IMG/VR virus record: IMGVR_UViG_3300023174_005338
Coordinates: 124,001-188,000 of that record
Strand: one strand, 5' to 3'
Length of the DNA stretch: 64,000 nucleotides
Both the position numbers and the translations under genes were made by a program. Shown piece by piece: positions 32,824 through 54,659 of this stretch (position 1 is the first letter of the stretch; each line of letters starts with the position of its first letter). The notes under the pieces were generated by a model, which worked only from the letters and a program-made list of their open reading frames with translations, ran no database searches and had not been told where the DNA came from.

Positions 32824-32905
32824 GACCCTTGAGGTTATGTGTAGGCGGCTGCTGCCTCACTATAAATAGATTCGCTACCTATTTCAGTGGAAGTGAGCTA
32901 GGTAA
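32821..32905 (+). ncRNA. Candidate structured RNA / cis element
   Basis: Stems AGGC/GCCT (32843-57) and CACT..AAATAG/CTATTT..AGTG (32858-89); contains TATAAATA 32861-32868. Confidence 0.35.
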
Positions 32906-32922
32906 TTACAATTTTCATCAAC

Positions 32923-34023
32923 ATGTCAAACTCGCCTGCTCCTAGTATACCGTTGACCGTCAAAGGTCCTGCCAAAGATCTAGTTTTGAATCAAGAAATT
33001 TTGTATTGGTATCCATGGCTAAAAGGCATAGCCGGCACGGATACCTATGTGCATCTTCATGCGCAATGGCAAGTCGACAAAAATTCTGATCAACCTTGGC
33101 CAGAATCACCGCCTACAGGTTACACAAACTATATCATCAGTGGCGACAGCCTGATGGTAGGCTGGGCAGAACTGTTGAGTCAACAACTCGATGCAAACAT
33201 AATACAACTATTTCAGAGCTACATACCTGACGATTTTACTAAAGAGAATACTTTACACTTTACCTATAACACCGCTCATCTCCGAGGTCGCCGTTTGGCC
33301 AATAGACTTGGTCCCATGTCAAATAAAAACATCCGTTACAAGGCCAGTGCGCTGACCCGACGAATTTCACAGAGTAAAATTATAATTTTTTCTGCCATGA
33401 AAGAAATATTAGGTGATCACGATGCTGTGTATAGTCTCCATAAAGTGTTAAGAGATGAAAAAAATATACACAGTTGGCAGACCACCGGCAATGCCACTTG
33501 CGATCATTACATGCATTTGTTTAGAACAAAATGGGCCAACTCAGAAATAAAACTTCCCTGGGATGATCATGTCATGTGGACCTACGATAATCCAGCTTAT
33601 GTAGAATCTGCCATCAATTTTACACAGGAAAGTTATCATTACAGTTACACTCACAATGCACAAGGTTGTTTTATTCAGCCAGGACCGTTTTTAACAGAAA
33701 AAACCTGGAAATGTATCCTGAGTGAAACAGCATTTATACCTGTTGGACAATATTTTTCGTATCACTGGTTGCAGAAACTGGGCTTTCAATTTGATTACGG
33801 AGCACTTGATTTGAGTTTTGATAACGATCCAGGCAATCTAACACGACTTGAAAAAATTGTTGATTTGATCAGGACCTTGGCTGATCATTCTGCACAAGAC
33901 CTATTTGACATGACACGAGACAGCACAGTTTACAACAAAAAACATTTGCTCAGTGACAATTTCATTGATGCTTGCCAACAGGATAACCAACCTTTTTATG
34001 ATTTTCTTAGCACACTAAAATAA
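32923..34023 (+). CDS. Hypothetical protein, possibly glycosyltransferase-like
   Basis: C-terminal PFLTEKTWK..F.P.GQ...L..LGF pattern. Confidence 0.55.
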   Translation: MSNSPAPSIPLTVKGPAKDLVLNQEILYWYPWLKGIAGTDTYVHLHAQWQVDKNSDQPWPESPPTGYTNYIISGDSLMVGWAELLSQQLDANIIQLFQSYIPDDFTKENTLHFTYNTAHLRGRRLANRLGPMSNKNIRYKASALTRRISQSKIIIFSAMKEILGDHDAVYSLHKVLRDEKNIHSWQTTGNATCDHYMHLFRTKWANSEIKLPWDDHVMWTYDNPAYVESAINFTQESYHYSYTHNAQGCFIQPGPFLTEKTWKCILSETAFIPVGQYFSYHWLQKLGFQFDYGALDLSFDNDPGNLTRLEKIVDLIRTLADHSAQDLFDMTRDSTVYNKKHLLSDNFIDACQQDNQPFYDFLSTLK

Positions 34024-34026: not shown

Positions 34027-34620
34027 ATGATCATAGGCAACCAAAAACCCATACGAATCATTGGCTACAGTGAATCATCTATGACTCAAGAGTTTGTAAA
34101 TGAGATATCAAAAACACATGTTTGCACAGTGATATCACCAGAAGACTTTGTCACAGACATTGATACAGACTATCAATACATAGTATCAGTCACGGTCGAC
34201 TTGCAAGAACGTAAAAAAATATTGGAGCAGGTTGACCAGCTTGACTTGGATTTAGTCACTTATATCCACAACACTGCCATAGTAAATGGCAATGTTAATC
34301 CTGGATCTTTTGTGTTTCCTTTTTGTAACATTGGTTTACATGCTAGACTAGGTAGACATTGTATTATAAGTGCTTACAGTATGATTGGACATTTCAGTGT
34401 ACTAGGGTCAAACTGTATTCTAAGACCAGGAGTTATGGTCACTGACAAATCTAGAATTGGCAACCACTGTGTTTTAAACATACGGTCTACAGTAACTAAC
34501 AAGGCACACATGGTAGATTATGTGGAACTTAAAGCCTTCAGTAGTGTGACAAAAAATATTACCAAGCCAGGCATTTACATTGGCTCCCCGGCAAGATCAA
34601 TGATTATATCATCAACTTAA
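34027..34620 (+). CDS. Hexapeptide-repeat (NeuD/PglD-like) acyltransferase
   Basis: [IVL]G-x-x-[CS]-[IV] hexads, YIGSPAR end. Confidence 0.8.
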   Translation: MIIGNQKPIRIIGYSESSMTQEFVNEISKTHVCTVISPEDFVTDIDTDYQYIVSVTVDLQERKKILEQVDQLDLDLVTYIHNTAIVNGNVNPGSFVFPFCNIGLHARLGRHCIISAYSMIGHFSVLGSNCILRPGVMVTDKSRIGNHCVLNIRSTVTNKAHMVDYVELKAFSSVTKNITKPGIYIGSPARSMIISST

Positions 34621-35535
34621 TTGTTTGATTAGATTATCTATTATCTGTTGGCAAGTTAATAATTCCGTGACATGATCTATACCATGTCCAAGATAAACGT
34701 GTCCATCTTTCTTGCCATGTATTCCACGTACTAATCCCATGGTGCCATTGGCATCATCGGGGCCATGATATGGCTGAAACTGCAAGGCACTTTGTTTGCG
34801 CTCTACGCCGCCCACTTGATGCACAAATTTTGTCAAATCGGCACTTTGTTTTTGTATGGCTGACAATTTGATTTCTGTGTTCAATGGACTTTCTACACTC
34901 AGGGCTAACACCGTGCCCACAGCAACCATTTCTGCACCCAGGTCGATGTAATCTTTGACCTGCTCGGCTGTGCCCACACCTCCATAAGGTATTAACATGG
35001 CTCCAGGAGTCAATTCACGTTGTGTTAAAAATAATTCTCGTATCGCATGAGATCCGGTAAATCCAGCACTTTCGGTACCTTTAATACAAAACCCGTCAAG
35101 TAAATGTAGATTCACGGTGGCTTGATCCACTGGGTCATATATGCGTTTAAAAACCTTGGTTCCTAAAGCCTTGATTGGGTCCAACAATGCAATCAGATCG
35201 GCGGTCAATTCTTGTTCGGTGGCTGTGAAATTAAAAGTATTTTTAGCACCGTAAATAATTTCCATAGTAGGAATACGATGAGATCTTACAATTTCCTGTA
35301 CGGCCACCGATTCGTATTCATACAATTCAAAACTTAGGTGTATGCAATTACTGCCAGTGCTTTGAACAAATTTATCTAGATCTTGTTGCATGCGGGTAGG
35401 ATTACCGTTGTACGTCCACGAACATAGACTAGGATACCCTCCAGCCTTGTGAACAGCCATGGCTAGTTCCACAGTTGAACCTTTGTTCATACAGGCTTCT
35501 AAAATGGGATATCGAGATTGAAATACAGCGGACAT
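34612..35535 (-). CDS. Nitronate monooxygenase / FabK-like flavoenzyme
   Basis: YPILEACM, ELAMAVHKAGG, KGTESAG, YGGVGT, VAVGTVL; minus-strand TAAATA 35540-35545. Confidence 0.7.
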   Translation of the reverse strand: MSAVFQSRYPILEACMNKGSTVELAMAVHKAGGYPSLCSWTYNGNPTRMQQDLDKFVQSTGSNCIHLSFELYEYESVAVQEIVRSHRIPTMEIIYGAKNTFNFTATEQELTADLIALLDPIKALGTKVFKRIYDPVDQATVNLHLLDGFCIKGTESAGFTGSHAIRELFLTQRELTPGAMLIPYGGVGTAEQVKDYIDLGAEMVAVGTVLALSVESPLNTEIKLSAIQKQSADLTKFVHQVGGVERKQSALQFQPYHGPDDANGTMGLVRGIHGKKDGHVYLGHGIDHVTELLTCQQIIDNLIKQLS

Positions 35536-35538
35536 AAA

Positions 35539-36630
35539 CTATTTACAATCAAAATGTTTGATCAACGATTTTCTTGACAGTTTTCCGGAATCTGATCGAG
35601 GTATGCTTTCTAATTGATTAATCCAAGAAGGATAACAAACAGAGTGTATAAGTTGCAAGCCCCGCACGACTCGTGACACGTCCACTGCACCAACATAGAC
35701 ACAATTCACTGTTGTTGTGCCAAAAATCACGATTTCTTGTAGTTCTGGAATGTCTTGCCGCATTTGTTGCTCTATACTGACCGGATCAATTTTGTAACCA
35801 CGAATATTGATACGATCAACACTGCGACCCAGTATTCGATAATAACCATGATCATCCTGCTCGGCCAAGTCACCGGTATCAAACCAATCCTGGGTATATG
35901 CTTGTTGGCTTCTGATCCACAAATTACCATCTCTTATGTCAGCCTCTACACCAGTGGTGGGCAGGCCCACGGTGCCAGGTCGTTGAGACCCAGACAAAGG
36001 ATTGCACAAAACATGACTCATGGCTTCAGTCATGCCAAAATATTCTATTACCGGCACCTGAAATTTGTGTTGTAGTGCCTGATACAGTTCCGGGCTCAGT
36101 GGAGCACTACCACTGCGGATCAATCTCAATGCAGTCAATGGCAGTTCGTTTATCACAGACAATATGTCAGGTATGGCCGACACAAATGTGGGTTGGTAAT
36201 CGACCATCTGTCGCACCTGGCGCACCGACAAAAAATGTGTTTCACATCCTGCGTCTCGTGTGGCCCAGTAAAGAGATTGCCCATGTGCATGCCAAAGGCT
36301 CATTACTCCCACATACCTATCGTTGGCAGTGATTTCCAAATCTTGCTGTATTGATCTTACAAGGTTATCAAGTTGTTGTTGTGTAAAGCTATAGAATTTG
36401 CTGTCGCCCACAGTGCCTGAAGTATACCACAGCAGTCGTTCGTTGCTGTAGTCGCCACCTGATCTTTGTTGTTGGTGATTGGGTTCAATCAGAAGGCTCC
36501 AATCAGATTGATCCAAAAGATATTTTTTCCTCGCAGGAGTATAATCTGGATTCACGATCATGATGCTGTAATCATCCAATTGATCTATGTAGTCTTGAGG
36601 ATTAGGGACACACAACACTGCTCTTTTCAT
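35539..36630 (-). CDS. AMP-binding acyl-CoA synthetase (adenylate-forming enzyme)
   Basis: YTSGTVG, YFGMTEA, FDTGDL, GRSVDRINIRGYKI; minus-strand TATAAATA 36664-36671. Confidence 0.85.
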   Translation of the reverse strand: MKRAVLCVPNPQDYIDQLDDYSIMIVNPDYTPARKKYLLDQSDWSLLIEPNHQQQRSGGDYSNERLLWYTSGTVGDSKFYSFTQQQLDNLVRSIQQDLEITANDRYVGVMSLWHAHGQSLYWATRDAGCETHFLSVRQVRQMVDYQPTFVSAIPDILSVINELPLTALRLIRSGSAPLSPELYQALQHKFQVPVIEYFGMTEAMSHVLCNPLSGSQRPGTVGLPTTGVEADIRDGNLWIRSQQAYTQDWFDTGDLAEQDDHGYYRILGRSVDRINIRGYKIDPVSIEQQMRQDIPELQEIVIFGTTTVNCVYVGAVDVSRVVRGLQLIHSVCYPSWINQLESIPRSDSGKLSRKSLIKHFDCK

Positions 36631-36671
36631 TGACCTACCTGGGAAATTTAATATATAATGAGTTATTTATA
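36630..36671. promoter_or_regulatory. Overlapping divergent promoters
   Basis: + TTGACC(36630)-18 nt-TATAAT(36654); minus-strand TATAAATA 36664-36671. Confidence 0.55.
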
Positions 36672-36688
36672 AAAGGAAAAAACTCCAA

Positions 36689-37606
36689 ATGAAAATGCTG
36701 TTGTTAACGCTGGGCATGATCTGGATTTCGGCGGTTCAAGCTCAGGAAGTCATACGCATACAAACTCCTTACGCGGCCAGCCACAGTGGTACTCCGGCCA
36801 TGTTGCGTATCATCGAAACATCCAATAACATTCAAAAAGACTATGTCTTTGTGCTGGAATTCCGTCCTGGCGGTAATCAAGTCATAGCGGTCAAACAAAT
36901 GGATCAAGATCCACAGCGCAATTTGGCCATTATAGCAGCATCGTTTGTAGAAAATACCGAACAGAAAATTTTATCGGCCGCAGACTATATTCCTGTTTGG
37001 AGTTTGGGTGATGCCTGCTGGATGGTCATATCTACTGTAGCTCGTAGTTCATCAATTTTTGGACTCAGAGATTCCCAAGAGCTCACAGTGGGCACTGTGG
37101 GATTTGGCAATGCCACCCATCTCACTGCCTTGCAGATTGGAAAGAAATACAATTTAAAAATACGTTTGGTACCATTCAAGTCCAACTATGATGCAGTAAT
37201 AAACATGGCCGGCGACAACGGAGTGACTTTTGGCATCGATACTCCAATTACATTTGAAAATCTACGTTCAAAAAACCCACGCCTGAAGAATTTGGCCGTG
37301 AGTTGTACAAAACGTTTGCCGGAGTATCCAGATGTGCCTACACTGCGTGAGCAAGGTATAGTGGCGCCGTCGGTGATCAACATTGTGGTGGCCAACCAGG
37401 TTATGTCCGCAGATCGTCGACAACAGTTGGGTAAAATTCTTGAACAAGCTACCAATCAAATTGGTGAAACTGAAATAGTTAGAACAAGCGGATTCGTGCC
37501 GCCACAGTTTGATCGAATCAGCGCACAGGAACATTTTACCAAAAATATAGAGTTGATCAGGCGACTGAGAGGTCAATTTGAAAGAGAAATCAAGCAATCA
37601 CAGTAA
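36689..37606 (+). CDS. Second Bug/TctC-family substrate-binding protein (divergent)
   Basis: Signal peptide; EFRPGGNQVIA, VGTVGFGNATHL, LVPFKS, YPDVPTLREQG. Confidence 0.8.
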   Translation: MKMLLLTLGMIWISAVQAQEVIRIQTPYAASHSGTPAMLRIIETSNNIQKDYVFVLEFRPGGNQVIAVKQMDQDPQRNLAIIAASFVENTEQKILSAADYIPVWSLGDACWMVISTVARSSSIFGLRDSQELTVGTVGFGNATHLTALQIGKKYNLKIRLVPFKSNYDAVINMAGDNGVTFGIDTPITFENLRSKNPRLKNLAVSCTKRLPEYPDVPTLREQGIVAPSVINIVVANQVMSADRRQQLGKILEQATNQIGETEIVRTSGFVPPQFDRISAQEHFTKNIELIRRLRGQFEREIKQSQ

Positions 37607-37609: not shown

Positions 37610-37638
37610 TTGACAAGCTGTAAAATATACTGTATAGT
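37610..37638 (+). promoter_or_regulatory. sigma70-like promoter
   Basis: TTGACA-17 nt-TATAGT; SD AAGGAG downstream. Confidence 0.7.
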
Positions 37639-37659
37639 AAACAAATTAAGGAGAAACTT

Positions 37660-37920
37660 ATGTCAACCAAAAACTTCACAGCAGAACAAACCAAAAAACT
37701 AAATCAAGTCATCAATGAAGGCATGCAGGTCATGCACGAGATCGAGACCTTGACAGGCGGACTCAATGACACTGTTAAAGCCATCGCCGAAGAACTAGAA
37801 ATCAAACCCAATGTGCTAAAAAAAGCCATACGCCTGGCACATAAAAGCGAGTTTGGTCGTGAGCAACAGGACCATGAACTCCTGGAACAGATCTTGACCA
37901 CTGTAGGCAAGACGCTATAA
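37660..37920 (+). CDS. T4 DsbA-like dsDNA-binding protein
   Basis: 86-aa helical protein, VKAIAEELEIKPNVLKKAIRLAHK, directly upstream of polymerase. Confidence 0.65.
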   Translation: MSTKNFTAEQTKKLNQVINEGMQVMHEIETLTGGLNDTVKAIAEELEIKPNVLKKAIRLAHKSEFGREQQDHELLEQILTTVGKTL

Positions 37921-45126: not shown

Positions 45127-45348
45127 ATGGGCAAGCGTGAATATCGTCCCAATCCACGTGCATTACAAACACTAGAAGAGTTGAGCAACTTCCTGGAGTT
45201 CTGTCGAGACTATGGCTACAGATTCCGCGAGGAGGATCTTTACAACTTTAAAGCCTATGCCTGGCAACAGTACAACAAGTTCAGCCAAGGCAAAAACGCC
45301 AAGAACATGTGGGTGGAAGATGCCCGCAGACTGGGACGCAACATATGA
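45127..45348 (+). CDS. Hypothetical protein (73 aa)
   Basis: SD AAGGA, coupled to next gene. Confidence 0.65.
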   Translation: MGKREYRPNPRALQTLEELSNFLEFCRDYGYRFREEDLYNFKAYAWQQYNKFSQGKNAKNMWVEDARRLGRNI

Positions 45349-46550
45349 GACGACTGTTCTACATGGGCCTAGAGAGCTATGAAGCTCGTTACACCCTACA
45401 ACTCACAGAATGGAATCGTCGTGTGTTCGACCGCCGTGGACTCGATGTTGTATATGTTCCTGGGTCGACCATTGACAACACACAGAGCATCAGCGTGGGT
45501 CAGGTTCTAGATGCACACGGCCGCAGTTATTTTTCAATGAGCCAGATGATGAATCTGGTTCAAATGATGCGCAATGGAGAAGTCACCAATGAAGATGTGG
45601 TCTACTTTGAAGACATGTTTCAGCCCGGTATCGAGAGCTTACCTTATATTCTCGATCAAGTGGATCCTAGCCAGCGTCCTCGTATTTTTGTTCGCTGTCT
45701 TGCTCAAGCCATTGATCCTGATGATTTCGTTCATGTGTGGGGCATGGCGGAGTGGATGTCAACGTATGAAAAAATGGTTAACCAATTCGTAACAGGTGTC
45801 CTGGCCACCAATGAAGAAATGGTTGCTCATATGCGTATCGCAGGATGGACTGCTCCTATCTACAATATTTCAGGATTGGCCTTTGGCAAACAGGAAGTTC
45901 TAGAGCGCATAGGCGGTGTACAGAATATAAAACCCTTTGACCAAAGAAAAATGCGTGTGGGCTTTGCTGCAAGATTTGATCAAGAGAAACAGCCAGACTT
46001 CTACATGGACTTGATTGAAATGTATCTAGCACAAGGACGTCACAAGGACATTGAGTTTGCCGTGTTTCAGGGTGGCCCACTGCGTAGCAACAATGCGAGA
46101 TATATTCTGCGAGCCAGAGAGTTGGAAAATCAAGGTCGACTCAAAATCTATGAAAACTTGAAGAAAAATGATTATTACGCTCTTGTCAACGATTCTCGTG
46201 TGTTGTTTAATTGTGCTTTGCAAGACTGGGTATCTAACACAGTATCAGAAGCCGATACTCTTGGTTGCAACGTGTTGTATCCTGCTTATCGCAGTTTCCC
46301 AGAAACCTTTGCTGACGATCCTAATCGCCTGTATGTGCCTTGGAGCATTGATGATGCCTTCCACAAGTTAGAAAACTTGTTGGATCAAGCACATCACAAC
46401 CAGGGCTTGATTTCAGATTGGACCGACGGCACTGTGGATCGTATCGTGGACATACTCGAAGGCACTGGTGAACAGTGGAACCGTGCAGGCAACCGTTATC
46501 GTGACCATGTCAGCCAAGCCAAATATCCGGTAAGGAAAATTGAAAAATGA
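45345..46550 (+). CDS. GT-B fold glycosyltransferase
   Basis: VGFAARFDQEKQ, EADTLGCNVL..AYRSFPE (group-1 ExxxxG pattern). Confidence 0.75.
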   Translation: MRRLFYMGLESYEARYTLQLTEWNRRVFDRRGLDVVYVPGSTIDNTQSISVGQVLDAHGRSYFSMSQMMNLVQMMRNGEVTNEDVVYFEDMFQPGIESLPYILDQVDPSQRPRIFVRCLAQAIDPDDFVHVWGMAEWMSTYEKMVNQFVTGVLATNEEMVAHMRIAGWTAPIYNISGLAFGKQEVLERIGGVQNIKPFDQRKMRVGFAARFDQEKQPDFYMDLIEMYLAQGRHKDIEFAVFQGGPLRSNNARYILRARELENQGRLKIYENLKKNDYYALVNDSRVLFNCALQDWVSNTVSEADTLGCNVLYPAYRSFPETFADDPNRLYVPWSIDDAFHKLENLLDQAHHNQGLISDWTDGTVDRIVDILEGTGEQWNRAGNRYRDHVSQAKYPVRKIEK

Positions 46551-47494
46551 GAGTAGTAGTCACCGGCGGAGCCGGATACATCGGTGGGCAAACCGTACTC
46601 AAACTGTTGGATGCTGGTCACAGTGTGTTTGCCATTGATCGTGTATGGGCTCCAGATCATCTTGAACATTCGGGTGCCAAGTGGTTGATTGGCGATTTTG
46701 CTGGCGAGGTGGCATTGCAAGCCATTGAAACCTTCCAACCCGATGCAATCATACACTGTGCTGGTACCAGCCTGGTAGGACCCAGCATGACCAATCCTGC
46801 GGAATACTATGACAACAACTTTGTTCGTACAAAAATTCTTTGCGATTGGTTGGTCCAAAAAAAAATAAAAACTAGACTGATCTTCTCCAGCAGTGCCGCA
46901 ACCTATGGCAATCCCATAATGACACCAGTGCAAGAAGTAGATCCCACCGAGCCTATCAGTCCATATGGTCAAAGCAAGCTCATGGTAGATTGGTTGTTGG
47001 CCAGCTACAAACATGCATACGACCTTGATTACGTGAGTTTTAGATATTTCAACGCCTGCGGCGCAGACAGTCAAGCTCGCCACGGACAAGCAGTTGGGGC
47101 CACTCATATCATTGCTCGTGTGCTAGAAGCGGTAAAAAACAAACAAGACTTTACCTTGTACGGCACTGACTATGCCACCGATGATGGCACATGTGTAAGA
47201 GATTACATCCACGTGGAGGATTTGGCCACTGCGCATGTCATGGCCATTGATCCTTCTATACCCAGCGACATTTATAATCTTGGAACCAACCGGGGCACAA
47301 GCAATCTTGAAGTAATTCAGGCCGCGGCAAAAATCACCCAACAAGATGTGGGCGTGTTGCACGGTCCCAAGCGTGCAGGCGATCCTGCTGTATTGACCGC
47401 AGACTGCGGCAAATTCATTGCAGTCAGTGCCTGGCAACCAAAATTTGATCTCAACGACATGATAGCTCATGCCTGGGCCTGGTACACCAGATGA
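46547..47494 (+). CDS. galE: UDP-glucose 4-epimerase
   Basis: GGAGYIG, FSSSAATYG, YGQSK, RYFNACG, DGTCVRDYIHV. Confidence 0.9.
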   Translation: MRVVVTGGAGYIGGQTVLKLLDAGHSVFAIDRVWAPDHLEHSGAKWLIGDFAGEVALQAIETFQPDAIIHCAGTSLVGPSMTNPAEYYDNNFVRTKILCDWLVQKKIKTRLIFSSSAATYGNPIMTPVQEVDPTEPISPYGQSKLMVDWLLASYKHAYDLDYVSFRYFNACGADSQARHGQAVGATHIIARVLEAVKNKQDFTLYGTDYATDDGTCVRDYIHVEDLATAHVMAIDPSIPSDIYNLGTNRGTSNLEVIQAAAKITQQDVGVLHGPKRAGDPAVLTADCGKFIAVSAWQPKFDLNDMIAHAWAWYTR

Positions 47495-48126
47495 AAACCC
47501 TTAATGACTATACTGATGCATTTTTAGCAATCAAAGATTTTGAATCTGCGTTGGCTGATTTTACTGGAGCTCCATTTGCCATCACCACTGATTGTTGCAC
47601 GCATGCCATTGAAATTGCTTTTAGATTAGCACATGATAGTTCTGCAGTATCCTTTCCTGCCCGAACCTATCTCAGTGTGCCCATGACCATGCATAAACTA
47701 GGTATTAATTATGTTTTTGAAGATATCAAATGGAGAGAATGTTATCAATTCAAAGGATCACAAATATGGGATTGTGCAAGACTGTTCAAAGAAAACATGT
47801 ATCAAGCCGGAACCATACAGTGTTTGAGTTTTGGAAGAACCAAACCGTTACAAATTAGTCGTGGAGGTTGCATATTGACCAATGATCCAGAACTTTATCA
47901 ACGAGCAAGCCGTATGCGTTATGATGGGCGTGATATTTTTCAATTCAGCCTCGGAACCGAGCATAGTTGGGACGTGCAAAAAGATTTTGAAGTCGGATAT
48001 CATTATTATTTGAGGCCCGAAGATTGTGTAACAGGGTTAAATCTTTTAGAACAAAGAAATTTTGTTGAACAGGTTGAAAAACACTACAACTATCCAGATT
48101 GTAGAACTATAAACATTCGAAATTAA
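47491..48126 (+). CDS. Short DegT/DnrJ-family PLP aminotransferase
   Basis: DCCTHAI, WDCA, LSFGRTKPL...RGGCIL; lacks usual C-terminal domain. Confidence 0.65.
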   Translation: MKTLNDYTDAFLAIKDFESALADFTGAPFAITTDCCTHAIEIAFRLAHDSSAVSFPARTYLSVPMTMHKLGINYVFEDIKWRECYQFKGSQIWDCARLFKENMYQAGTIQCLSFGRTKPLQISRGGCILTNDPELYQRASRMRYDGRDIFQFSLGTEHSWDVQKDFEVGYHYYLRPEDCVTGLNLLEQRNFVEQVEKHYNYPDCRTINIRN

Positions 48127-48138
48127 ATCCATTTGATC

Positions 48139-48166
48139 TTGCAAAAATCTAAATATCGTGTATAAT
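48139..48166 (+). promoter_or_regulatory. Dual promoter (sigma70-like with TAAATA in spacer)
   Basis: TTGCAA-16 nt-TATAAT; TAAATA 48150-48155. Confidence 0.6.
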
Positions 48167-48177
48167 AAAAGGAAACC

Positions 48178-49017
48178 ATGACAACATTTACCAGTGAAGA
48201 CAGAGAGAACGCAGTGAAAAATAATGCCAGCCAAAAAACATTTGATGCCTTGCAACAAAGCCGTATTGTTGCCGAAGCACCATATCATCCAGGCTATGAA
48301 GATGCTGTAGTAGATCCCGACGAAGGCCGCCCACTGAGCGTGGTTATACGTGACAGCATGCGAGCTTCAGGTAAAAGATTCTGGGCTGGCGACAACATTA
48401 GTGAGTTTATCGAATCAGAGCGAGAACGCGAACAGCTGATTGACGAAGCCACACAAGCATTTGAAACTGTCTTGGACACCTTGTTGATTGATCGTGCGAC
48501 AGATCCCAACAGCCAAGGCACAGCAAGACGCTTGGCAAAAATGTATTTCAATGAAATCATGGCCGGCCGGTATGAACCCAGACCCGATGCCACAGCATTT
48601 CCCAACGATAGCGAGGACAGATATGAAGGAATGTTGGTTGTTAGAAGTGAATTGCGTAGTATGTGTAGTCATCACCATCAGCCTGTATCTGGGGTGGCTT
48701 ACATTGGTATCATTGCTGCCAACAAACTTATTGGCCTTAGCAAGTATACTCGTATTGCTCAGTGGTGCGCTAGGCGTGGTACTCTCCAGGAAGAGCTAGC
48801 CAACGACATTGCCAGAGAGATTGCCCGAGCCACTGACAGCGAAAACATTGGCGTTTATATCCAAGCCACACACGGTTGCTGTGAAAATCGTGGCATCATG
48901 GCACACAGTTCGTTGACTCAGACCACGGTGCTCAAAGGTGCGTTCAAAACTGATCCTGGCACCAAGAAAGAGTTCATGGATAATATCAAACTGCAACAAG
49001 AGTTTGCACCAAGATGA
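48178..49017 (+). CDS. folE: GTP cyclohydrolase I (N-terminally extended)
   Basis: SMCSHHHQP, GLSKYTRI, RRGTLQE, HGCCENRG. Confidence 0.92.
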   Translation: MTTFTSEDRENAVKNNASQKTFDALQQSRIVAEAPYHPGYEDAVVDPDEGRPLSVVIRDSMRASGKRFWAGDNISEFIESEREREQLIDEATQAFETVLDTLLIDRATDPNSQGTARRLAKMYFNEIMAGRYEPRPDATAFPNDSEDRYEGMLVVRSELRSMCSHHHQPVSGVAYIGIIAANKLIGLSKYTRIAQWCARRGTLQEELANDIAREIARATDSENIGVYIQATHGCCENRGIMAHSSLTQTTVLKGAFKTDPGTKKEFMDNIKLQQEFAPR

Positions 49018-49442
49018 TCCAGCCCTTGAGAGATGATCTCATGGTGCAACAACAGTTGCCCAACGGTTTAGAAGGTCGGGTGGCCGCTTGGCAACACATG
49101 GTGGCTGTAATCATGTTGAACCAGACTGGTCGTAAGCCTGTAAAAACTGTATTTCCCATCTTCATGCATTATTGGCCTAGTCCCAGCAAGTTTGTACGAG
49201 CAACAGAACAACAAGTTCGAGATGTGATATGGAGTCTAGGCATGGTCAATGTGCGGTATAAAAGATTGGTTGAAATGACCTACGACTTCATGCGCTGGGA
49301 TCTAGGTGATGCCACCAAGTTATATGGTATTGGCAAATACGGTTCGGACAGTTACGAAATGTTTTTCAAGAACAATTACCGAGTAGAACCCACAGACAAA
49401 GAGCTGATTCGCTATTTAGAACAAGAAGTTAGTGTATACTAA
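49014..49442 (+). CDS. MBD4-like HhH DNA glycosylase
   Basis: IMLNQT, LGMVNVR, LYGIGKYGSDSY (HhH plus catalytic Asp). Confidence 0.8.
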   Translation: MIQPLRDDLMVQQQLPNGLEGRVAAWQHMVAVIMLNQTGRKPVKTVFPIFMHYWPSPSKFVRATEQQVRDVIWSLGMVNVRYKRLVEMTYDFMRWDLGDATKLYGIGKYGSDSYEMFFKNNYRVEPTDKELIRYLEQEVSVY

Positions 49443-49448
49443 CCTGAG

Positions 49449-49477
49449 TTGACACAAAATACCCGTTTTGCTATAAT
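49449..49477 (+). promoter_or_regulatory. Consensus sigma70 promoter
   Basis: TTGACA-17 nt-TATAAT. Confidence 0.85.
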
Positions 49478-49507
49478 AGCAATATTATAAACTCTAATGG
49501 GTGTCAT

Positions 49508-51949
49508 ATGCGTCGCAAACTGCTGTGGACTTGTCTTTTTGGTACAGTTATTGTCGTCACTGGGTGTGGTGGAGGAGGTGGTGGAGGTGGTGGCTCTCCA
49601 TACAACAGTCCTAACCCTATACTTAGACAAGTTCCGTATTCCACTCCTGTACGAGTTGGATCAGTCACTCCCATAAACAGCACCGCACGAGAATATGACT
49701 CCAGTGCCATGTTTGCTGAAAATCTCAGTGGTACCGGTGAAGAATTAATCACAGCCGGCAGATCTAGTACCAGTAATCAAGGTTCCTATCCCACATCTAA
49801 TCTCAATGTGTTTGGTTGGAGCAACGGCACTTTGGTCAATCGAACCAGTCAGTGGTTCGCCGGCACAGACAACGTGATCTTAGGCACAGAACCCAGTGTT
49901 AAATTTGCTGACTTTGACGGTGATGGTCGCAAAGACATGTATGTGGCACCCAATACTGATGCCAGCTCAACCGGATCCGGGTGGGTATTTTTCAACAACG
50001 GTACCAGGTTTACCCGAGTAGATTTAAATCTCGGCATACATGGCCACGACAGTGCAGTTTATGATATCAACGGAGATGGTCGCAGTGATATTTTTACCAC
50101 TGGTAGTCGTGTGAGCTTTGGCAATGCTGATCGAACTTTCACCACACACGCAGTTTCAGGCGCAAATTATGGCGGCACCGCAGGATCAGTGGCCATAGCA
50201 GACTTCATGGGCACTGGTGGCAGCAGCATCATACTTACTGATCAAAATGCCTGGCAGACAGGAAATAATCGCTTGTATAGTTGGAGCATGGTCGACGGTG
50301 GTAGATCTACACTGGATTTTCGACTGACCATGATCAGTGCCCTGCCGGATTCGAGATTTCTCCTGCCCAAGTGGAGTGGGCATGGATTTGCTGGCAGCCA
50401 CGACTATAGAGCCCTGGCATTTGACTTTGACAATTCAGGTCTGCCCAGTGCTGTGATATTCAGTCGACCCCTTAAAGCCAACGGCACCGGCGGATACACC
50501 TGGCCCGACTACAGTGAAATACAGTTCTTGAAAAACCGCGGTGGTGGCACTTTTGTAGATGTCACTGACTCGACCTTGGTTGGGTATAACACAAACACAT
50601 CTTCACAACACTACAATCCCAAACTCATGGACGTGAACAACGATGGTCTTATTGACATTGTGTTGGGCGGAACCAGTTGGACCAGTGCCACTGGAGCCCA
50701 GGTCTTGATACACACCAAAGAACACAAATACGTGGCCAGTTATAGCACAGTGCTCGACGCTTTTCTTGGTCAGTCGTTGAACTTGGAAAAAGCCATAAAT
50801 GCCAGTGCAGAAACAGGCGCCAATGGCGTTGTTTTTGTGCGTGGGCCAGATGGCAACATGTATCTGGCCACCGCGGTCAGTTATGTCAGTGGCGGTGTGC
50901 AACAAAAAGCCATTTATCTCAGCAAGCTGGGCTCCACGGTTACCAATGCCCAGGCCACTGCCGCGGCAATCAAACAGGCTTGGCCCTGGATGAGTGACGG
51001 CCAGATCAACACAGTGCTGGCACAGAGCTCGACCACATGGTTTGGCATGAATGTGTTGGACCCAGAAAAAGCATTTCAACCAATCGGCAACTTGGGCATA
51101 CCGCTTGCCACCGGTGGCATAGCACCCATACGTGGTTACATCACAGGCCTGAACATTGGTGACGGGTCAGCTGTGGTCACTGACAGCTTGGGTCGTGCAT
51201 TCTCTACCAACATTAAACCCATGAATATCACTGCCATGAATGCGTTTGGATACAATACCGAACACAATGATCAGTATGAACTGACCAGCCATGCCGAATA
51301 TCTAGTCAATGGTACCTTGACCACTGTGGGCAATCTACGCTTTGGCAGTGATTTTGCCGGTAGAGACAACACCGGCCAGGGTCTTAACCGACCTCGACAA
51401 TACACCGTGGGTGTGCCAAGATGGTACAGCAAGGGAAACTGGAGTGCAGGCACACAATATACCTATCTAAATTCCAACCCGTGGATGGCTTTTGGTGGTG
51501 CCTGGGGTGAGATCACCGGAAGTGGCGTCATGGACAATGTGATCACATATCGCCGCGATGGATTCTCAGCACAGGCCAGTGCCATGCATGTGACAACCAA
51601 CATAACTCCGGGTCTGATCACTCGAGTCAACAACATGTGGGGTGCCTGGGCAGAATCCGGATATAGATTTGGTGATGCCAAAAGGTCCGGTGACATGGGC
51701 ATATATGCTGGCATCAAACCTGTGGTATTATCAGGATCAGTTGAAGCCCGAATACCCACAGCCGTTGACATGTCAGGTAATGTAGTATATACTAACAAGA
51801 AGTTAATGGTGCAAAATCAAACCACTGGTTATTTACGAACACTATATACTAATCAATTGGACCGTCGAACTCAGTTGAGACTGAGTGCTGTGAGCACTAC
51901 CGCAGGACAGTATCGGGCCATGACCGAACTTAAATTTTGGATAGACTAA
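49508..51949 (+). CDS. Lipoprotein with FG-GAP/VCBS repeats and probable C-terminal beta-barrel
   Basis: VTG|C lipobox, Gly9 linker, ADFDGDGRKD, DINGDGRSD, DVNNDGLID; amphipathic strands, ends ELKFWID. Confidence 0.7.
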   Translation: MRRKLLWTCLFGTVIVVTGCGGGGGGGGGSPYNSPNPILRQVPYSTPVRVGSVTPINSTAREYDSSAMFAENLSGTGEELITAGRSSTSNQGSYPTSNLNVFGWSNGTLVNRTSQWFAGTDNVILGTEPSVKFADFDGDGRKDMYVAPNTDASSTGSGWVFFNNGTRFTRVDLNLGIHGHDSAVYDINGDGRSDIFTTGSRVSFGNADRTFTTHAVSGANYGGTAGSVAIADFMGTGGSSIILTDQNAWQTGNNRLYSWSMVDGGRSTLDFRLTMISALPDSRFLLPKWSGHGFAGSHDYRALAFDFDNSGLPSAVIFSRPLKANGTGGYTWPDYSEIQFLKNRGGGTFVDVTDSTLVGYNTNTSSQHYNPKLMDVNNDGLIDIVLGGTSWTSATGAQVLIHTKEHKYVASYSTVLDAFLGQSLNLEKAINASAETGANGVVFVRGPDGNMYLATAVSYVSGGVQQKAIYLSKLGSTVTNAQATAAAIKQAWPWMSDGQINTVLAQSSTTWFGMNVLDPEKAFQPIGNLGIPLATGGIAPIRGYITGLNIGDGSAVVTDSLGRAFSTNIKPMNITAMNAFGYNTEHNDQYELTSHAEYLVNGTLTTVGNLRFGSDFAGRDNTGQGLNRPRQYTVGVPRWYSKGNWSAGTQYTYLNSNPWMAFGGAWGEITGSGVMDNVITYRRDGFSAQASAMHVTTNITPGLITRVNNMWGAWAESGYRFGDAKRSGDMGIYAGIKPVVLSGSVEARIPTAVDMSGNVVYTNKKLMVQNQTTGYLRTLYTNQLDRRTQLRLSAVSTTAGQYRAMTELKFWID

Positions 51950-51950
51950 C

Positions 51951-52319
51951 ATGACACTTGTAGAAGCTCAACAAGCTGGAATAGCACCATGGGACAATGA
52001 AATAGACAACCGTAATCGAGTGGTTGTTTACCTAGACCGGTATCCCTGCACGCCCGGACATAGATTGTATGTGCCCAAAGACAATGACAATCCCAACTGG
52101 GTAGTAAGAGCCTTTGAGGAGGCCCTGGCCGATGGTACCCACATGGTAGCATCTGGTGAGTGCGATGGGTTTAACATTGGTTACAACAGCGGCGAGGCAG
52201 CCGGACAAACTGTCATGTATCCACACATACATCTTATTCCACGTCGAGTCGGAGATGTAGCAGATCCAGTGGGCGGTGTGCGTAACACCATACCCGGCAA
52301 AGGAAATTATCGCAAATGA
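51951..52319 (+). CDS. HIT-family nucleotide hydrolase
   Basis: YPCTPGHRLYVP, NSGEAAGQTVMYPHIHLIPR. Confidence 0.85.
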   Translation: MTLVEAQQAGIAPWDNEIDNRNRVVVYLDRYPCTPGHRLYVPKDNDNPNWVVRAFEEALADGTHMVASGECDGFNIGYNSGEAAGQTVMYPHIHLIPRRVGDVADPVGGVRNTIPGKGNYRK

Positions 52320-52332
52320 AAGAAAACAGTCA

Positions 52333-53259: not shown

Positions 53260-54076
53260 GGCCGGACACGACGACTGGCTTGGTCTCACATTGGATCCTG
53301 GTCAATTTTGTGTGGAAATACTCAAACCTGCTACCGTGGTCAAGTCAAATTTTCATCATGAAGCTGATCGCGCGATTAGATATCTGGCAGATAGATACTG
53401 TGATCGTCCTTTGTATTTGGCACTCAGTGGTGGCATCGACAGTGAGTTTGTTGCCAATCTCTTGCTGAAAAATTCCATACCTTTTAGACCAATCATCTTA
53501 AAAATTGATTCATTCAACAGCCCGGAATCATGGTATGCCGAGTATTGGTGCAAGCAACATGATATTGATCCCATAAGACTGAGTCTCACAACTGATCAAT
53601 ACATCCAGGAAATGAAAAAATACTATCCGTACTTGCTAAAATTACAGAATGCACTTCAAACACCAATGATGTATTTGTATGATTATGTAAATCAGCTCAA
53701 TGGTTATTGTATCTATTCTGCCGGAGACATCAATCTAGATTTAGAAGAAAAAAAATTTTATTGTTACAGTTTGGATTTTATCAGCGATTTACTGAACAAT
53801 GGACACCCCACCAGCTTTTTTATGTACACTCCGGAATTGGCATTGAGCTACGTCTCTGAATTTGATGTTAACATTACGGAACAAGAAAACAAATTAAATT
53901 TTTATAATGTATCGCCTAGACCAAAAATTGATTACATATCTTCTTTACATAGTTGTTCCACGGTGGCAGAGGTTATTGATAAGTTTTGTTACATCTCAAA
54001 ACAACAAATAGCGCCTTACCCGTATTGGTATGGAAAAAAAGAAGAATTGATAAAAAAACTTGTTGGGTCAAACTAA
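53225..54076 (+). CDS. PP-loop (adenine nucleotide alpha hydrolase-like) protein
   Basis: LALSGGIDSE; start uncertain. Confidence 0.6.
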   Translation: MILGHRQSRLIKAGHDDWLGLTLDPGQFCVEILKPATVVKSNFHHEADRAIRYLADRYCDRPLYLALSGGIDSEFVANLLLKNSIPFRPIILKIDSFNSPESWYAEYWCKQHDIDPIRLSLTTDQYIQEMKKYYPYLLKLQNALQTPMMYLYDYVNQLNGYCIYSAGDINLDLEEKKFYCYSLDFISDLLNNGHPTSFFMYTPELALSYVSEFDVNITEQENKLNFYNVSPRPKIDYISSLHSCSTVAEVIDKFCYISKQQIAPYPYWYGKKEELIKKLVGSN

Positions 54077-54082
54077 TGTCAA

Positions 54083-54617: not shown

Positions 54618-54659
54618 GATTTGTTGGCACCGTAAACGGCGTATATAAATATTCGCACT

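What the first reader, a model, noticed from the sequence alone, without database searches (positions are those of the whole stretch)
34027..37606. Divergent Bug cassette no. 2 mirrors cassette no. 1
All three minus-strand genes in the window sit head-to-head with a Bug gene. In both cassettes the enzymes are driven by a minus-strand TAAATA-type late motif and the Bug by a sigma70-like promoter overlapping it. Here the enzymes are an acyl-CoA ligase and an NMO/FabK-like flavoenzyme, converging on an acyltransferase. An early binding protein plus late synthesis enzymes is what a secreted small-molecule signal or scavenging circuit would look like. A simple carboxylate uptake-and-activation unit is the plainer reading.
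Basis: partly seen in the sequence, partly recalled or inferred. Interest (0 to 1): 0.65.

Follow-up and report, generated by a model that had tools for sequence, protein, structure and literature searches.

The report
Phage acid-uptake, activation and sugar-acylation module
In an uncultured freshwater jumbo phage, an exported acid-binding protein sits beside a compact acid-activating ligase and an amino-sugar acyltransferase; this module recurs in many related phages and most likely helps build the phage's own modified sugars rather than a signalling circuit.

Summary
The four genes are real and correctly typed. They are a PglD/VioB-like hexapeptide acyltransferase (34027-34620 +), an NMO-family flavoenzyme (34612-35535 -), a compact 363-aa ANL ligase (35539-36630 -) and a signal-peptide-bearing TctC/Bug binding protein (36689-37606 +).

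The window is part of a complete 337-kb jumbo phage from lakes, probably with a Burkholderiales host.

For cassette 2 the promoter layout holds: a minus-strand TATAAATA, and a plus-strand TTGACC-18-TATAAT. For cassette 1 it holds only weakly.

The architecture recurs in more than 20 related viral contigs. The ligase is the constant partner of sugar-tailoring genes: the LbH acyltransferase, half-size DegT-like genes and dehydratases. This is also true in phages without a Bug.

Where a Bug is present it is always next to the ligase. The pair is usually divergent, but in L059 and L201/L202 it forms a single operon, so an early/late split is not a conserved feature.

Best reading: the Bug takes up a short (di)carboxylic acid, the ligase activates it, and the acyltransferase puts it on the phage's amino sugar. 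No evidence supports the signal-circuit idea. All biochemical steps are inferred. This is a new variant of known kinds, of moderate interest.

The parts
32861..32868 (+). TATAAATA late-type promoter core, 54 nt upstream of the hyp366-acyltransferase operon
   Evidence: Read directly from the sequence. Listed among the TAAATA sites. It is one of only 7 exact TATAAATA copies within 70 nt upstream of a gene in the genome.
32923..34023 (+). hyp366: a virus-only protein co-transcribed with the acyltransferase. Possibly sugar-related (glycosyltransferase-like); this is a lead only.
   Evidence: No Pfam, NCBIfam or PHROG hit. The Atlas model resembles half of a 705-aa viral protein fused to an Epimerase/GDP_Man_Dehyd domain, with a weak GT10 lead. 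At least 5 paralogues in the genome. Travels with the LbH gene in L016, L017, L058, L191-L202. My single-sequence fold failed.
34027..34620 (+). LbH197: hexapeptide N-acyltransferase of the PglD/VioB/NeuD type. It is the only hexapeptide protein in the genome.
   Evidence: Hexapep 40.8 bits. TIGR03570 NeuD/PglB/VioB 89.6 bits, below its cut-off. Aligns over residues 49-192 with PglD and VioB, and its His in MIGHF aligns with the His in PglD's VIEHE. Only Hexapep hit in the genome.
34612..35535 (-). NMO307: NMO-family FMN TIM-barrel-like flavoenzyme, second gene of the minus-strand operon. An accessory gene; not FabK.
   Evidence: NMO 40.8 bits against a cut-off of 28. FabK equivalog 26.7 bits against 453. 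33% identical to the paralogue NMO318 near Bug4. Present in L009-L011, L024 and L192-L200, absent in L012, L013, L016, L017, L023, L053.
35539..36630 (-). AMP363: compact ANL adenylating enzyme (acid-CoA ligase type). This is the conserved core of the cassette.
   Evidence: AMP-binding 93 bits. All core motifs present and invariant across 57 homologues. The model (pLDDT 92) best matches oxalyl-CoA synthetases, MatB and MenE at TMq 0.81-0.85. 588 metagenomic homologues, none in cultured phages.
36664..36671 (-). TATAAATA late-type promoter core for the ligase-NMO operon, 33 nt from the ATG
   Evidence: An ATAA[AG]TA motif is kept upstream of the ligase in all divergent relatives examined except L020, where the ligase follows the acyltransferase gene in an operon. 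ATAAGTA is also orientation-biased, 11 sense against 1 antisense.
36630..36659 (+). Sigma70-like promoter TTGACC-18-TATAAT for Bug2. Its -35 hexamer overlaps the ligase start codon.
   Evidence: 11 of 12 positions match. It resembles the genome's early class, TTGAC[CA]-17-TGnTATAAT about 30 nt from the ATG, but lacks the TGn. Conserved only in L009, L010, L012 and L024.
36689..37606 (+). Bug2: exported orphan solute-binding protein of the tripartite tricarboxylate transporter family. The signal peptide is about residues 1-18.
   Evidence: TctC 37.4 bits. Residues 17-277 align with the solved protein 7ndr, E 1.8e-8. The signal peptide and an AVQA|QE cleavage site are read. 405 homologues, all metagenomic. 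No TctA in the phage. RNA-library contigs lie on it.
37610..37920 (+). Sigma70-like promoter (37610-37638) and an 86-aa putative regulator (37660-37920), always found between this cassette and the DNA polymerase
   Evidence: (phrog_12534 and phrog_639).
1260..3708 (.). Cassette 1: methyltransferase-like gene (1260-2000, -), Bug1 (2122-3093, +) and sulfotransferase-like gene (3094-3708, +)
   Evidence: Pfam hits: TctC 55 bits, Methyltransf_23 and Sulfotransfer_3 both weak. The triad is conserved in 47 viral contigs, and the methyltransferase gene flips strand in three of them.
45309..63999 (+). Nucleotide-sugar gene cluster that would supply the amino-sugar acceptor: GT1-like gene, three 4,6-dehydratase/epimerases, DegT aminotransferases, a split TPP enzyme and methyltransferases
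   Evidence: In L051, L014 and L019 the ligase sits inside the equivalent cluster.

Best explanation
The cassette is the acyl-supply-and-transfer arm of the phage's own amino-sugar (glycan) tailoring pathway, coupled to an uptake protein.

PROPOSED CHAIN
1. Bug2 is exported to the periplasm.
2. As an orphan TTT binding protein, it hands a short carboxylic, probably dicarboxylic, acid to the host's TctAB membrane channel.
3. The compact ANL enzyme AMP363 adenylates that acid and most likely makes its CoA thioester.
4. The PglD/VioB-like acyltransferase LbH197 puts the acyl group on the amino group of a nucleotide-linked amino sugar. That sugar is made by the phage's dehydratase and DegT genes.
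5. The NMO-like flavoenzyme, and in most relatives a half-size DegT-like protein, trim the acid or the sugar.

TIMING. The two convergent enzyme operons carry the phage's late promoter core, so the product is made together with virion parts. In this phage Bug2 has a host-type promoter. In other phages it is simply co-transcribed with the ligase.

SHOWN: gene identities, motifs, fold, conservation and gene linkage.
INFERRED: every biochemical step, the nature of the acid, and the final target of the sugar.
For: LIGASE-ACYLTRANSFERASE LINK
- Tail-to-tail neighbours in the polymerase-adjacent layout: L012, L013, L016, L017, L023, L053, L058, L191, L201.
- One operon in L020, where the LbH profile scores E 7e-35.
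- Neighbours inside a sugar cluster in L051, in the order ligase, LbH, DegT-like, radical SAM, dehydratase, GT1-like.

LIGASE-SUGAR LINK
- In L192-L199 and L024 the operon is ligase, NMO, DegT-like (220 aa).
- In L014 and L019 the ligase converges on the half-size DegT gene.

ACYLTRANSFERASE
- LbH197 is the genome's only hexapeptide acyltransferase.
- The genome encodes three full-length DegT/aminotransferase genes plus a half-size DegT-like gene (five DegT hits in four genes), and four dehydratase/epimerases.
- It aligns with PglD and VioB, including the His that aligns with the His of PglD's VIEHE.

LIGASE CHEMISTRY
- All adenylation motifs are intact and invariant.
- The nearest sequences and folds are oxalyl-CoA synthetases, malonyl-CoA synthetase MatB and MenE. 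All three act on acids that carry a second carboxylate.
- No carrier protein is encoded in the phage.

BUG-LIGASE LINK
- Adjacent and divergent in at least 12 distinct contigs, at 41-90% Bug identity.
- Adjacent and co-directional in L059 and L201/L202.
- A second, unrelated ANL-Bug pair (AMP508-Bug5) exists in the same genome.

BUG IDENTITY. TTT binding proteins bind carboxylates, and orphan ones beside enzymes are read as substrate importers (review PMC5812351).

EXPRESSION
- Both enzyme operons have an exact TATAAATA, a motif that precedes structural genes.
- In a lake RNA library, identical contigs lie on Bug2 and the regulator only. None lie on the enzyme genes.

PRECEDENT. In Vibrio cholerae O1, perosamine is N-acylated with tetronate by a dedicated gene set (VC0248-VC0252) that includes the ATP-binding protein WbeL (PMC3441752).
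Against: - No biochemical evidence exists for any step.
- The ligase occurs without a Bug in L013, L025, L192-194, L014, L019, L020, L021 and L051. It occurs without the acyltransferase in L025, L014, L019 and L021. No partner is therefore obligatory.
- LbH197 scores below NCBIfam's cut-off for the NeuD/PglB/VioB family: 89.6 against 160.8.
- Known PglD-type enzymes mostly use acetyl-CoA, which needs no dedicated ligase.
- Bug2 lacks the canonical P-F-x-A-G-G-x-x-D carboxylate-pincer signature; it has P-Y-A-A-S-H-S-G-T-P instead (PMC5812351).
- The sugar cluster lies 8 kb and more away in this genome.
- The target of the sugar (virion protein, host envelope or DNA) is unknown.
- The RNA evidence consists of three contigs from one environmental sample, without strand or time information.
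Confidence: 0.45

Rival explanations
1. Plain nutritional auxiliary genes. Bug2 plus the ligase (with the NMO enzyme) import and activate a common carboxylate so the infected cell can burn it or feed central metabolism. The acyltransferase next door is unrelated.
For: - Orphan Bug genes beside catabolic enzymes are typical of Burkholderiales (PMC5812351).
- The phage also carries isocitrate lyase, a TRAP binding protein and a Bug5-Rieske dioxygenase set, all of which look catabolic.
- The ligase resembles oxalyl- and malonyl-CoA synthetases.
- Bug and ligase form one operon in L059 and L201.
Against: - The ligase is a virus-only compact family with no close cellular relative. After two 360-aa clusters, the matches are generic ANL domains.
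- It keeps company with the LbH acyltransferase, DegT-like and dehydratase genes even where no Bug is present.
- It carries the late promoter core shared with virion genes. That is late for an energy-harvesting role.
- No downstream catabolic enzymes are in the module.
Confidence: 0.22
2. Neighbours without a shared job. The site between the dCMP-deaminase block and the polymerase is a hot spot for accessory genes. Bug2 belongs to the early polymerase-side transcription unit, and the enzymes belong to a separate late sugar unit.
For: - Gene content at this site varies widely: radical SAM, hyp366, NMO, DegT-like and Bug come and go.
- G+C is lowest here, 0.39-0.41 against about 0.45-0.49 elsewhere.
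- Bug2 has its own sigma70-like promoter and is followed by the regulator and the polymerase.
- RNA contigs cover Bug2 and the regulator only.
Against: - Wherever a Bug is present at this site it touches the ligase, in both orientations. That includes a 4-bp overlapping operon and a different genomic context in L059.
- A second ANL-Bug pair exists elsewhere in the genome.
- By chance, two ANL genes both lying next to one of five Bugs among about 400 genes would be expected at well under 1 in 1000.
Confidence: 0.18
3. One reading: a small-molecule signal circuit. Late enzymes make a secreted acyl compound, and an early periplasmic receptor senses it in later infections.
For: In this phage the motifs do suggest different promoters for the two arms. 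An RNA library holds Bug2 but not the enzyme genes.
Against: - The temporal split is not conserved.
- No exporter, regulator coupled to the binding protein, or lysis-lysogeny switch is apparent.
- The phage has five divergent Bugs, each beside different enzymes. That fits substrate supply better than one signal.
- The ligase and acyltransferase sit in sugar clusters in Bug-less phages.
Confidence: 0.04
4. Nucleobase or DNA hypermodification. The ligase and acyltransferase acylate an amino group on a modified base, for example an aminomethyl-deazaguanine or a thymidine derivative, rather than on a sugar.
For: - The cassette lies next to the DNA polymerase and dCMP deaminase.
- In L014, L019 and L051 the ligase is head-to-head with or close to GTP cyclohydrolase I, with PTPS nearby.
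- Radical SAM genes are frequent neighbours.
Against: - No TGT/DpdA-type transglycosylase is in the genome.
- The only QueC-like hit is weak and lies elsewhere.
- The acyltransferase aligns along its whole length with sugar-nucleotide N-acetyltransferases.
- DegT-like and dehydratase genes are its closest companions.
Confidence: 0.07

Closest known systems
Orphan Bug/TctC solute-binding proteins of Burkholderiales that sit beside enzymes, such as TphC next to terephthalate dioxygenase, AdpC, and the Bugs next to arylmalonate decarboxylases
   Same: Same Pfam family and full-length similarity to TphC (7ndr). Sec signal peptide. No adjacent TctAB. Placed next to an enzyme that acts on a carboxylate (PMC5812351).
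   Different: Encoded by a virus, in five divergent copies per genome (about 20-26% identical to each other, where BLASTP aligns them at all). Bug2 lacks the canonical A-G-G-x-x-D pincer signature. Its partner is a virus-only compact ligase tied to sugar tailoring, not a catabolic operon.
Oxalyl-CoA synthetases (AAE3 5ie0-3, Pcs60p 8aff), malonyl-CoA synthetase MatB and o-succinylbenzoate-CoA ligase MenE
   Same: Best sequence and fold matches, TMq 0.81-0.85. All ANL catalytic motifs are present, including the C-terminal lysine loop.
   Different: 363 residues instead of about 500: roughly the first 100 residues of the N-terminal domain are missing. Only 18-24% identity. The substrate is unknown.
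PglD / VioB / NeuD amino-sugar N-acetyltransferases
   Same: Left-handed beta-helix with an N-terminal domain, of similar length. The His that aligns with the His of PglD's VIEHE is kept. Associated with DegT-type and dehydratase genes.
   Different: Below the NCBIfam family cut-off. Paired with a dedicated acid-activating enzyme, which suggests a non-acetyl donor. LpxD scores equally well in the helix region.
Tetronate acylation of perosamine in the Vibrio cholerae O1 antigen (VC0248-VC0252, including WbeL)
   Same: A dedicated set of genes, including an ATP-binding activating enzyme, makes an unusual acid and attaches it to the amino group of a 4-amino-4,6-dideoxy sugar (PMC3441752).
   Different: That system is bacterial and chromosomal. 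From my own knowledge, it uses a carrier protein and has no uptake protein. The phage has no carrier protein. Sequence relatedness was not tested here.
Cyanophage PstS and other phage-borne periplasmic binding proteins (auxiliary metabolic genes)
   Same: A phage supplies only the binding-protein part and relies on the host's membrane transporter. This comparison rests on my own knowledge.
   Different: A different transporter family (ABC versus TTT) and a different purpose: a general nutrient versus, as proposed here, a specific building block. No TctC-type family exists in PHROGs v4, and the INPHARED collection holds no phage homologue: its single weak partial match is to an unannotated human-gut contig (26% identity over 54% of Bug2, E 3e-4).
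T4-type late promoters (TATAAATA)
   Same: Same core sequence, orientation-biased upstream of genes, and it precedes the portal, sheath, baseplate and adaptor genes.
   Different: The consensus here is looser, ATAA[AG]TA. No late sigma factor was sought and no timing data exist.

Membership tests
TTT solute-binding proteins (TctC/Bug, PF03401) | Pfam TctC score above the gathering cut-off | tested here: met
   37.4 bits against 27 for Bug2. Bug1 scores 55.3.
TTT solute-binding proteins (TctC/Bug, PF03401) | Full-length similarity to a solved family member | tested here: met
   Residues 17-277 align with residues 19-290 of 7ndr, E 1.8e-8. BugD, Bug27, AdpC and terephthalate-binding proteins also match.
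TTT solute-binding proteins (TctC/Bug, PF03401) | Export signal (periplasmic location) | tested here: met
   A hydrophobic N-terminus ending in AVQA|QE, read from the translation. All five phage Bugs have one. No predictor program was run.
TTT solute-binding proteins (TctC/Bug, PF03401) | Pincer signature P-F-x-A-G-G-x-x-D in the beta1-alpha1 loop | tested here: inconclusive
   Bug3, Bug4 and Bug5 keep G-G/S-x-x-D. The Bug2 group has P-Y-A-A-S-H-S-G-T-P, with one extra residue and no Asp. The review notes that variants with hydroxyl side chains exist (PMC5812351).
TTT solute-binding proteins (TctC/Bug, PF03401) | Delivers ligand to a TctAB membrane unit | not testable with these tools
   No TctA in the phage. 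A host TctAB would be needed. The host is inferred only from isocitrate lyase similarity to Burkholderiales.
ANL superfamily acid-CoA ligases | AMP-binding domain above cut-off, with core motifs A3, A5, A7, A8 and A10 | tested here: met
   93.1 bits. The motifs TSGTVGDSK, YFGMTE, TGD, GRSVDRINIRGYKI and SGKLSRK are present and invariant across 57 homologues.
ANL superfamily acid-CoA ligases | Two-domain ANL fold | tested here: met
   Model pLDDT 92. TMq 0.81-0.85 to oxalyl-CoA synthetases, MatB and MenE.
ANL superfamily acid-CoA ligases | Full-size N-terminal domain (about 500 residues in total) | tested here: not met
   363 residues. Alignments begin at about residue 165 of the 500-residue enzymes. 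It is a compact variant, so I file it in the superfamily and not in any named ligase family.
ANL superfamily acid-CoA ligases | Forms a CoA thioester, rather than loading a carrier protein or making an amide | not testable with these tools
   No PP-binding carrier protein in the phage. Chemistry untested.
NeuD/PglD/VioB sugar N-acetyltransferases (TIGR03570) | Family model above the curated cut-off | tested here: not met
   89.6 bits against 160.8. It is therefore 'PglD-like', not a called member.
NeuD/PglD/VioB sugar N-acetyltransferases (TIGR03570) | Whole-length alignment, including the residue equivalent to the catalytic His | tested here: met
   Residues 49-192 align with PglD residues 48-194. 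The His of MIGHF aligns with the His of VIEHE. That this His is catalytic in PglD rests on my own knowledge.
NeuD/PglD/VioB sugar N-acetyltransferases (TIGR03570) | Genomic association with sugar 4,6-dehydratase and DegT aminotransferase genes | tested here: met
   Adjacent in L051 and L024 and in L192-L200. In this genome those genes lie 8 kb or more away.
FabK enoyl-ACP reductase II / nitronate monooxygenase | FabK equivalog score, and an ACP partner | tested here: not met
   26.7 bits against 453. No ACP in the phage. Only the broad NMO Pfam family is met: 40.8 against 28.
Phage small-molecule communication circuit | Conserved separation of receptor and synthase expression, plus a link to an infection decision | tested here: not met
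   Bug and ligase form one operon in L201/L202 and L059. Bug5 lies in a late-motif operon. No decision module was found. Actual timing was not measured.
T4-type late promoter | Core motif oriented upstream of genes and enriched before structural genes | tested here: met
   77 sense against 27 antisense. Precedes portal, sheath, baseplate wedge and adaptor genes.
T4-type late promoter | Dedicated late sigma factor, and measured late timing | not tested
   No search for a gp55-like factor. No time course is available for an uncultured phage.

The most novel reading that the evidence does not exclude
A clade of freshwater jumbo phages carries its own set of orphan TTT binding proteins. Each is paired with an enzyme gene: in two of the five pairs (Bug2, Bug5) that enzyme is an ANL acid-activating enzyme. 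The phages would use them to pull specific exogenous carboxylic acids through the host's TctAB channel, and they would build those acids into virion-associated glycans or other late-made hypermodifications. If so, the chemistry of the phage particle would depend on what organic acids are in the water. The phage, not the host, would decide which are imported.
Probability: 0.25. Interest if true: 0.75.

Novelty: new variant of a known kind. Interest (0 to 1): 0.55.

Why it matters
Phage-borne binding proteins are known mainly for bulk nutrients such as phosphate. Here a large, widespread but uncultured phage clade keeps several tricarboxylate-transporter-type binding proteins. None has a counterpart in PHROGs. 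Bug2, the only one searched, has no homologue in cultured phages either.

Each of these binding proteins is tied to an enzyme. Cassette 2 links uptake, ATP-dependent activation and transfer onto an amino sugar. That makes a testable case that phages import specific building blocks for their own surface or nucleic-acid chemistry.

The cassette also yields a compact 360-residue ANL enzyme family of possible biocatalytic interest. It gives two usable promoter classes for this clade.

If instead the module is only nutritional, it is an ordinary auxiliary metabolic gene set.

Tried and rejected
SEARCHES THAT FOUND NOTHING USEFUL
- Megablast of the cassette against cultured phages: no match.
- Protein searches of the ligase and Bug2 against the same collection: only about 25% identical hits, apparently bacterial or contaminant sequence.
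- PHROGs: no family for any Bug, or for hyp366, h380 or h442.
- Rfam on the whole window: nothing. tRNA scan: none.
- Repeat scan of 31-38.5 kb: only chance-level short repeats.
- Literature searches for phage-borne TctC/Bug: only a tctA domain hit in SUP05 viruses.

TOOL FAILURES AND WEAK RESULTS
- Single-sequence fold of hyp366 failed (pLDDT 33), and no fold search was made on it.
- The most distant full-length ligase relatives (P0245, P0247) lie on short contigs without informative neighbours.
- The QueC/PP-loop lead for h442 (Atlas score 0.94) was not backed by Pfam and stays a lead.

IDEAS REJECTED
- FabK-type fatty-acid reduction: FabK model 26.7 against 453 bits, and no ACP.
- Deazaguanine DNA modification as the main role: no TGT/DpdA.
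- A conserved 'AATAAGTATT' inside the ligase gene on the Bug strand as a promoter. It is explained by the conserved K-Y-L-L codons.
- The 203-aa minus ORF at 46496-47107, which overlaps two plus-strand genes, is treated as a shadow ORF.

Full report
WHAT THE WINDOW IS

The window is bases 124001-188000 of a 337,119-bp IMG/VR virus record with direct terminal repeats, rated complete. Its family-B DNA polymerase is 42-50% identical to those of the jumbo phages Phosso, Atu_ph07 and the Rak2/121Q group.

Near-identical DNA occurs in freshwater and lake metagenomes from several studies. The phage's isocitrate lyase is 77-80% identical to those of Rubrivivax, Aquabacterium, Piscinibacter and other Burkholderiales. 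This is the only host clue, and it is indirect. It does fit a host group known for large Bug families (PMC5812351).

THE OBSERVATION

All four genes exist as described.

- 34027-34620(+) is a hexapeptide acyltransferase. Its best family is NeuD/PglB/VioB at 89.6 bits, below the curated cut-off. It aligns over residues 49-192 with PglD and VioB, including the His that aligns with the His of PglD's VIEHE.
- 34612-35535(-) passes the broad NMO Pfam model (40.8 bits) but is far from FabK (26.7 against 453 bits).
- 35539-36630(-) is an ANL adenylating enzyme (93 bits). All catalytic motifs are intact.
- 36689-37606(+) passes the TctC model and aligns over almost its full length with the solved TTT binding protein 7ndr. 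It begins with a typical export signal.

The ligase and the NMO gene are 3 bp apart. The NMO gene and the acyltransferase gene overlap tail-to-tail by 9 bp.

The three long minus-strand genes of the window do face Bug genes. A gap-filling 113-aa minus ORF at 9154-9495 is probably a fourth minus-strand gene, and it does not face a Bug.

PROMOTERS

TAAATA is the most orientation-biased hexamer in the 70 nt upstream of genes: 77 sense against 27 antisense. ATAAGTA behaves the same way, 11 against 1. These motifs precede the portal, tail sheath, baseplate wedge, head-tail adaptor and fibre-like genes. Reading them as the late promoter core is therefore reasonable, but no timing data exist.

A second class, TTGAC[CA]-17-TGnTATAAT about 30 nt from the start codon, marks many small genes.

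In cassette 2:
- The ligase operon has an exact minus-strand TATAAATA 33 nt from its ATG.
- Bug2 has TTGACC-18-TATAAT (11 of 12 positions) 29 nt from its ATG.
- The two cores lie back-to-back in a 58-bp spacer.
- The hyp366-acyltransferase operon on the other side also has an exact TATAAATA.

The two convergent enzyme arms therefore share one motif class, and Bug2 differs.

In cassette 1 only a distant minus-strand GTAAATAC (76 nt away) is seen. No acceptable sigma70-like site is present.

Elsewhere in the genome Bug4 has its own TAAATA, and Bug5 sits behind an ANL gene in a TATAAATA-led operon. 'Bug early, enzymes late' is thus a feature of this one spacer, not a rule.

One lake RNA library holds three identical contigs on Bug2 and the downstream regulator and none on 32800-36781. 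This is compatible with separate expression. It is thin evidence: contigs only, one sample, no strand information.

RECURRENCE IN OTHER GENOMES

The ligase has 588 homologues in metagenomes and none in cultured phages. At 50% clustering only two further full-length clusters of the 360-residue form exist. After them come generic ANL domains. It is a virus-clade family.

Layouts found in related viral contigs:

1. The window's layout. Reading in the window's orientation, the order is acyltransferase (+), then, converging on it from the minus strand, an optional DegT-like gene, an optional NMO gene and the ligase, then Bug2, the regulator and the polymerase (all +). This layout recurs at 53-93% ligase identity in L009-L012, L016-L018, L023, L024, L053, L058, L191, L195 and L198-L199.
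2. Bug missing: L013, L025 and L192-194.
3. Ligase and Bug both missing: L200.
4. Acyltransferase missing: L025.
5. Ligase inside the sugar cluster, without a Bug. In L051 it converges on the acyltransferase, followed by a half-size DegT-like gene, a radical SAM gene, a dehydratase and a GT1-like gene. In L014 and L019 it lies between GTP cyclohydrolase I and the half-size DegT-like gene.
6. Acyltransferase and ligase in one operon, next to DegT and epimerase genes: L020.
7. Bug-like gene and ligase co-directional: 8 bp apart in L059; overlapping by 4 bp behind an ATAAGTA motif in L201/L202.

In most NMO-bearing relatives the enzyme operon is ligase, NMO, DegT-like (220 aa). The window and L009 have lost the last gene.

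Cassette 1 is even more stable. The triad of methyltransferase-like gene, Bug1 and sulfotransferase-like gene occurs in 47 contigs at 43-90% identity. The methyltransferase gene changes strand in three of them.

WHAT THE PARTS SAY

The ligase model is confident (pLDDT 92). It superposes best on oxalyl-CoA synthetases, MatB and MenE, as does the sequence search. These enzymes activate acids that carry a second carboxylate. The phage enzyme lacks about 100 N-terminal residues of the usual fold.

The phage has no acyl carrier protein and no TctA.

The acyltransferase is the only hexapeptide protein in a genome that encodes three full-length DegT/aminotransferase genes plus a half-size DegT-like gene (five DegT hits in four genes), four dehydratase/epimerases, a split TPP enzyme, several methyltransferases and a GT1-like gene. 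Most of these lie in window 45-64 kb.

hyp366 is virus-only. Its Atlas model resembles half of a viral protein fused to a sugar dehydratase/epimerase domain. This is a lead, not a result.

The five Bugs are only about 20-26% identical to each other, where BLASTP aligns them at all, and all have export signals. Bug2's pincer loop departs from the family signature (PMC5812351).

INTERPRETATION

Two gene links are strong, because each survives changes of orientation and of genomic context. These are ligase with acyltransferase and DegT-like genes, and Bug with ligase.

Put together, the most economical model has three steps: uptake of an acid (Bug2 plus host TctAB), activation (the ligase), and transfer onto an amino sugar (the acyltransferase). 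The flavoenzyme and the DegT-like protein would act as trimming steps. The product would be made late, with the virion.

The tetronate acylation of perosamine in Vibrio cholerae O1 is a bacterial precedent for a dedicated acid-activating gene set serving an amino sugar (PMC3441752).

I put 0.45 on the whole chain. I put more on 'the ligase and acyltransferase are sugar-tailoring genes' and about even odds on 'Bug2 supplies their acid'.

The rivals are:
- plain nutritional use;
- mere neighbourhood at an accessory-gene hot spot;
- base or DNA modification;

The signal circuit is weakened by the operon arrangements and by the lack of any decision module.

NOVELTY

Every protein belongs to a known superfamily. 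The assembly appears undescribed: virus-encoded orphan TTT binding proteins in several copies, each tied to an enzyme, and one tied to a compact virus-only ANL ligase and a PglD-like acyltransferase. It is absent from PHROGs, from cultured phage genomes and from the searchable literature.

I rate it a new variant of known kinds, interest 0.55.

Noticed in passing
window 45309-63999: A large nucleotide-sugar gene cluster. It holds a GT1-like gene, three 4,6-dehydratase/epimerases, a half-size DegT-like gene (47491-48126), a full DegT (58466), a class I/II aminotransferase (59794), a TPP enzyme split into two genes (60957, 61961), an FkbM methyltransferase and two further methyltransferases.
   Followed up: partly
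window 4987-6282: A phage-encoded isocitrate lyase (355 bits), 77-80% identical to those of Burkholderiales such as Rubrivivax, Aquabacterium and Piscinibacter. It is a glyoxylate-shunt auxiliary gene and the only host clue.
   Followed up: partly
genome 273605-277879 (L007:5605-9879): A TATAAATA-led operon: a 508-aa ANL enzyme, then Bug5, then the alpha and beta subunits of a Rieske ring-hydroxylating dioxygenase. It resembles the terephthalate tphC-A2-A3 arrangement.
   Followed up: no
genome 206187-213210 (L006:5187-12210): A third divergent Bug cassette plus tandem binding proteins. The order is h380, Bug3, a DctP-type TRAP binding protein, a 190-aa minus-strand gene, NMO318, then h442 (minus strand) head-to-head with Bug4. 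h380 and h442 are paralogues of unknown function, with only a weak QueC/PP-loop lead.
   Followed up: partly
window 1260-3708 and L060-L106: The triad of methyltransferase-like gene, Bug1 and sulfotransferase-like gene is conserved in 47 viral contigs up to 374 kb long. The methyltransferase gene lies on the other strand in L101, L103 and L104. The linkage is therefore functional and does not depend on gene orientation, and so not on a shared divergent promoter region.
   Followed up: partly
whole genome; for example window 49478-49506 upstream of 49508: A strong early-type promoter class, TTGAC[CA]-17-TGnTATAAT(AGT), lies about 30 nt before many mostly small genes. It is distinct from the ATAA[AG]TA late class.
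   Followed up: partly
window 9154-9495 (-): A 113-aa minus-strand ORF nearly fills the gap between two plus-strand genes and faces 9504-10277. It is a probable extra minus-strand gene not paired with a Bug.
   Followed up: no
window 32923-34023 and genome 15711, 61405, 224620, 225707, 236163: hyp366 belongs to a virus-only family with at least five paralogues in this genome. Several lie near sugar or tail-fibre genes. These are possible glycosyltransferases.
   Followed up: partly
window 48178-49017; L051:958-1446: The phage has GTP cyclohydrolase I, and relatives also have PTPS, yet no TGT/DpdA-type transglycosylase is found in the genome. The role of the pterin/deazapurine genes is open.
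   Followed up: partly
window 32001-36000: The lowest G+C of the window (0.39-0.41 against about 0.45-0.49) coincides with the stretch of variable gene content from the radical SAM gene to the ligase.
   Followed up: no
genome 245116-260094 (-): A single 4992-aa ORF next to baseplate and fibre-like genes. It is flanked by a block of 350-490-aa minus-strand genes that includes a carbamoyltransferase homologue.
   Followed up: no
L021:5152-7765; L051:6028-6923: In Bug-less relatives the ligase is flanked by SGNH/GDSL-type hydrolase-like genes and a small DUF2061 membrane protein. These may be further acyl-handling partners.
   Followed up: no
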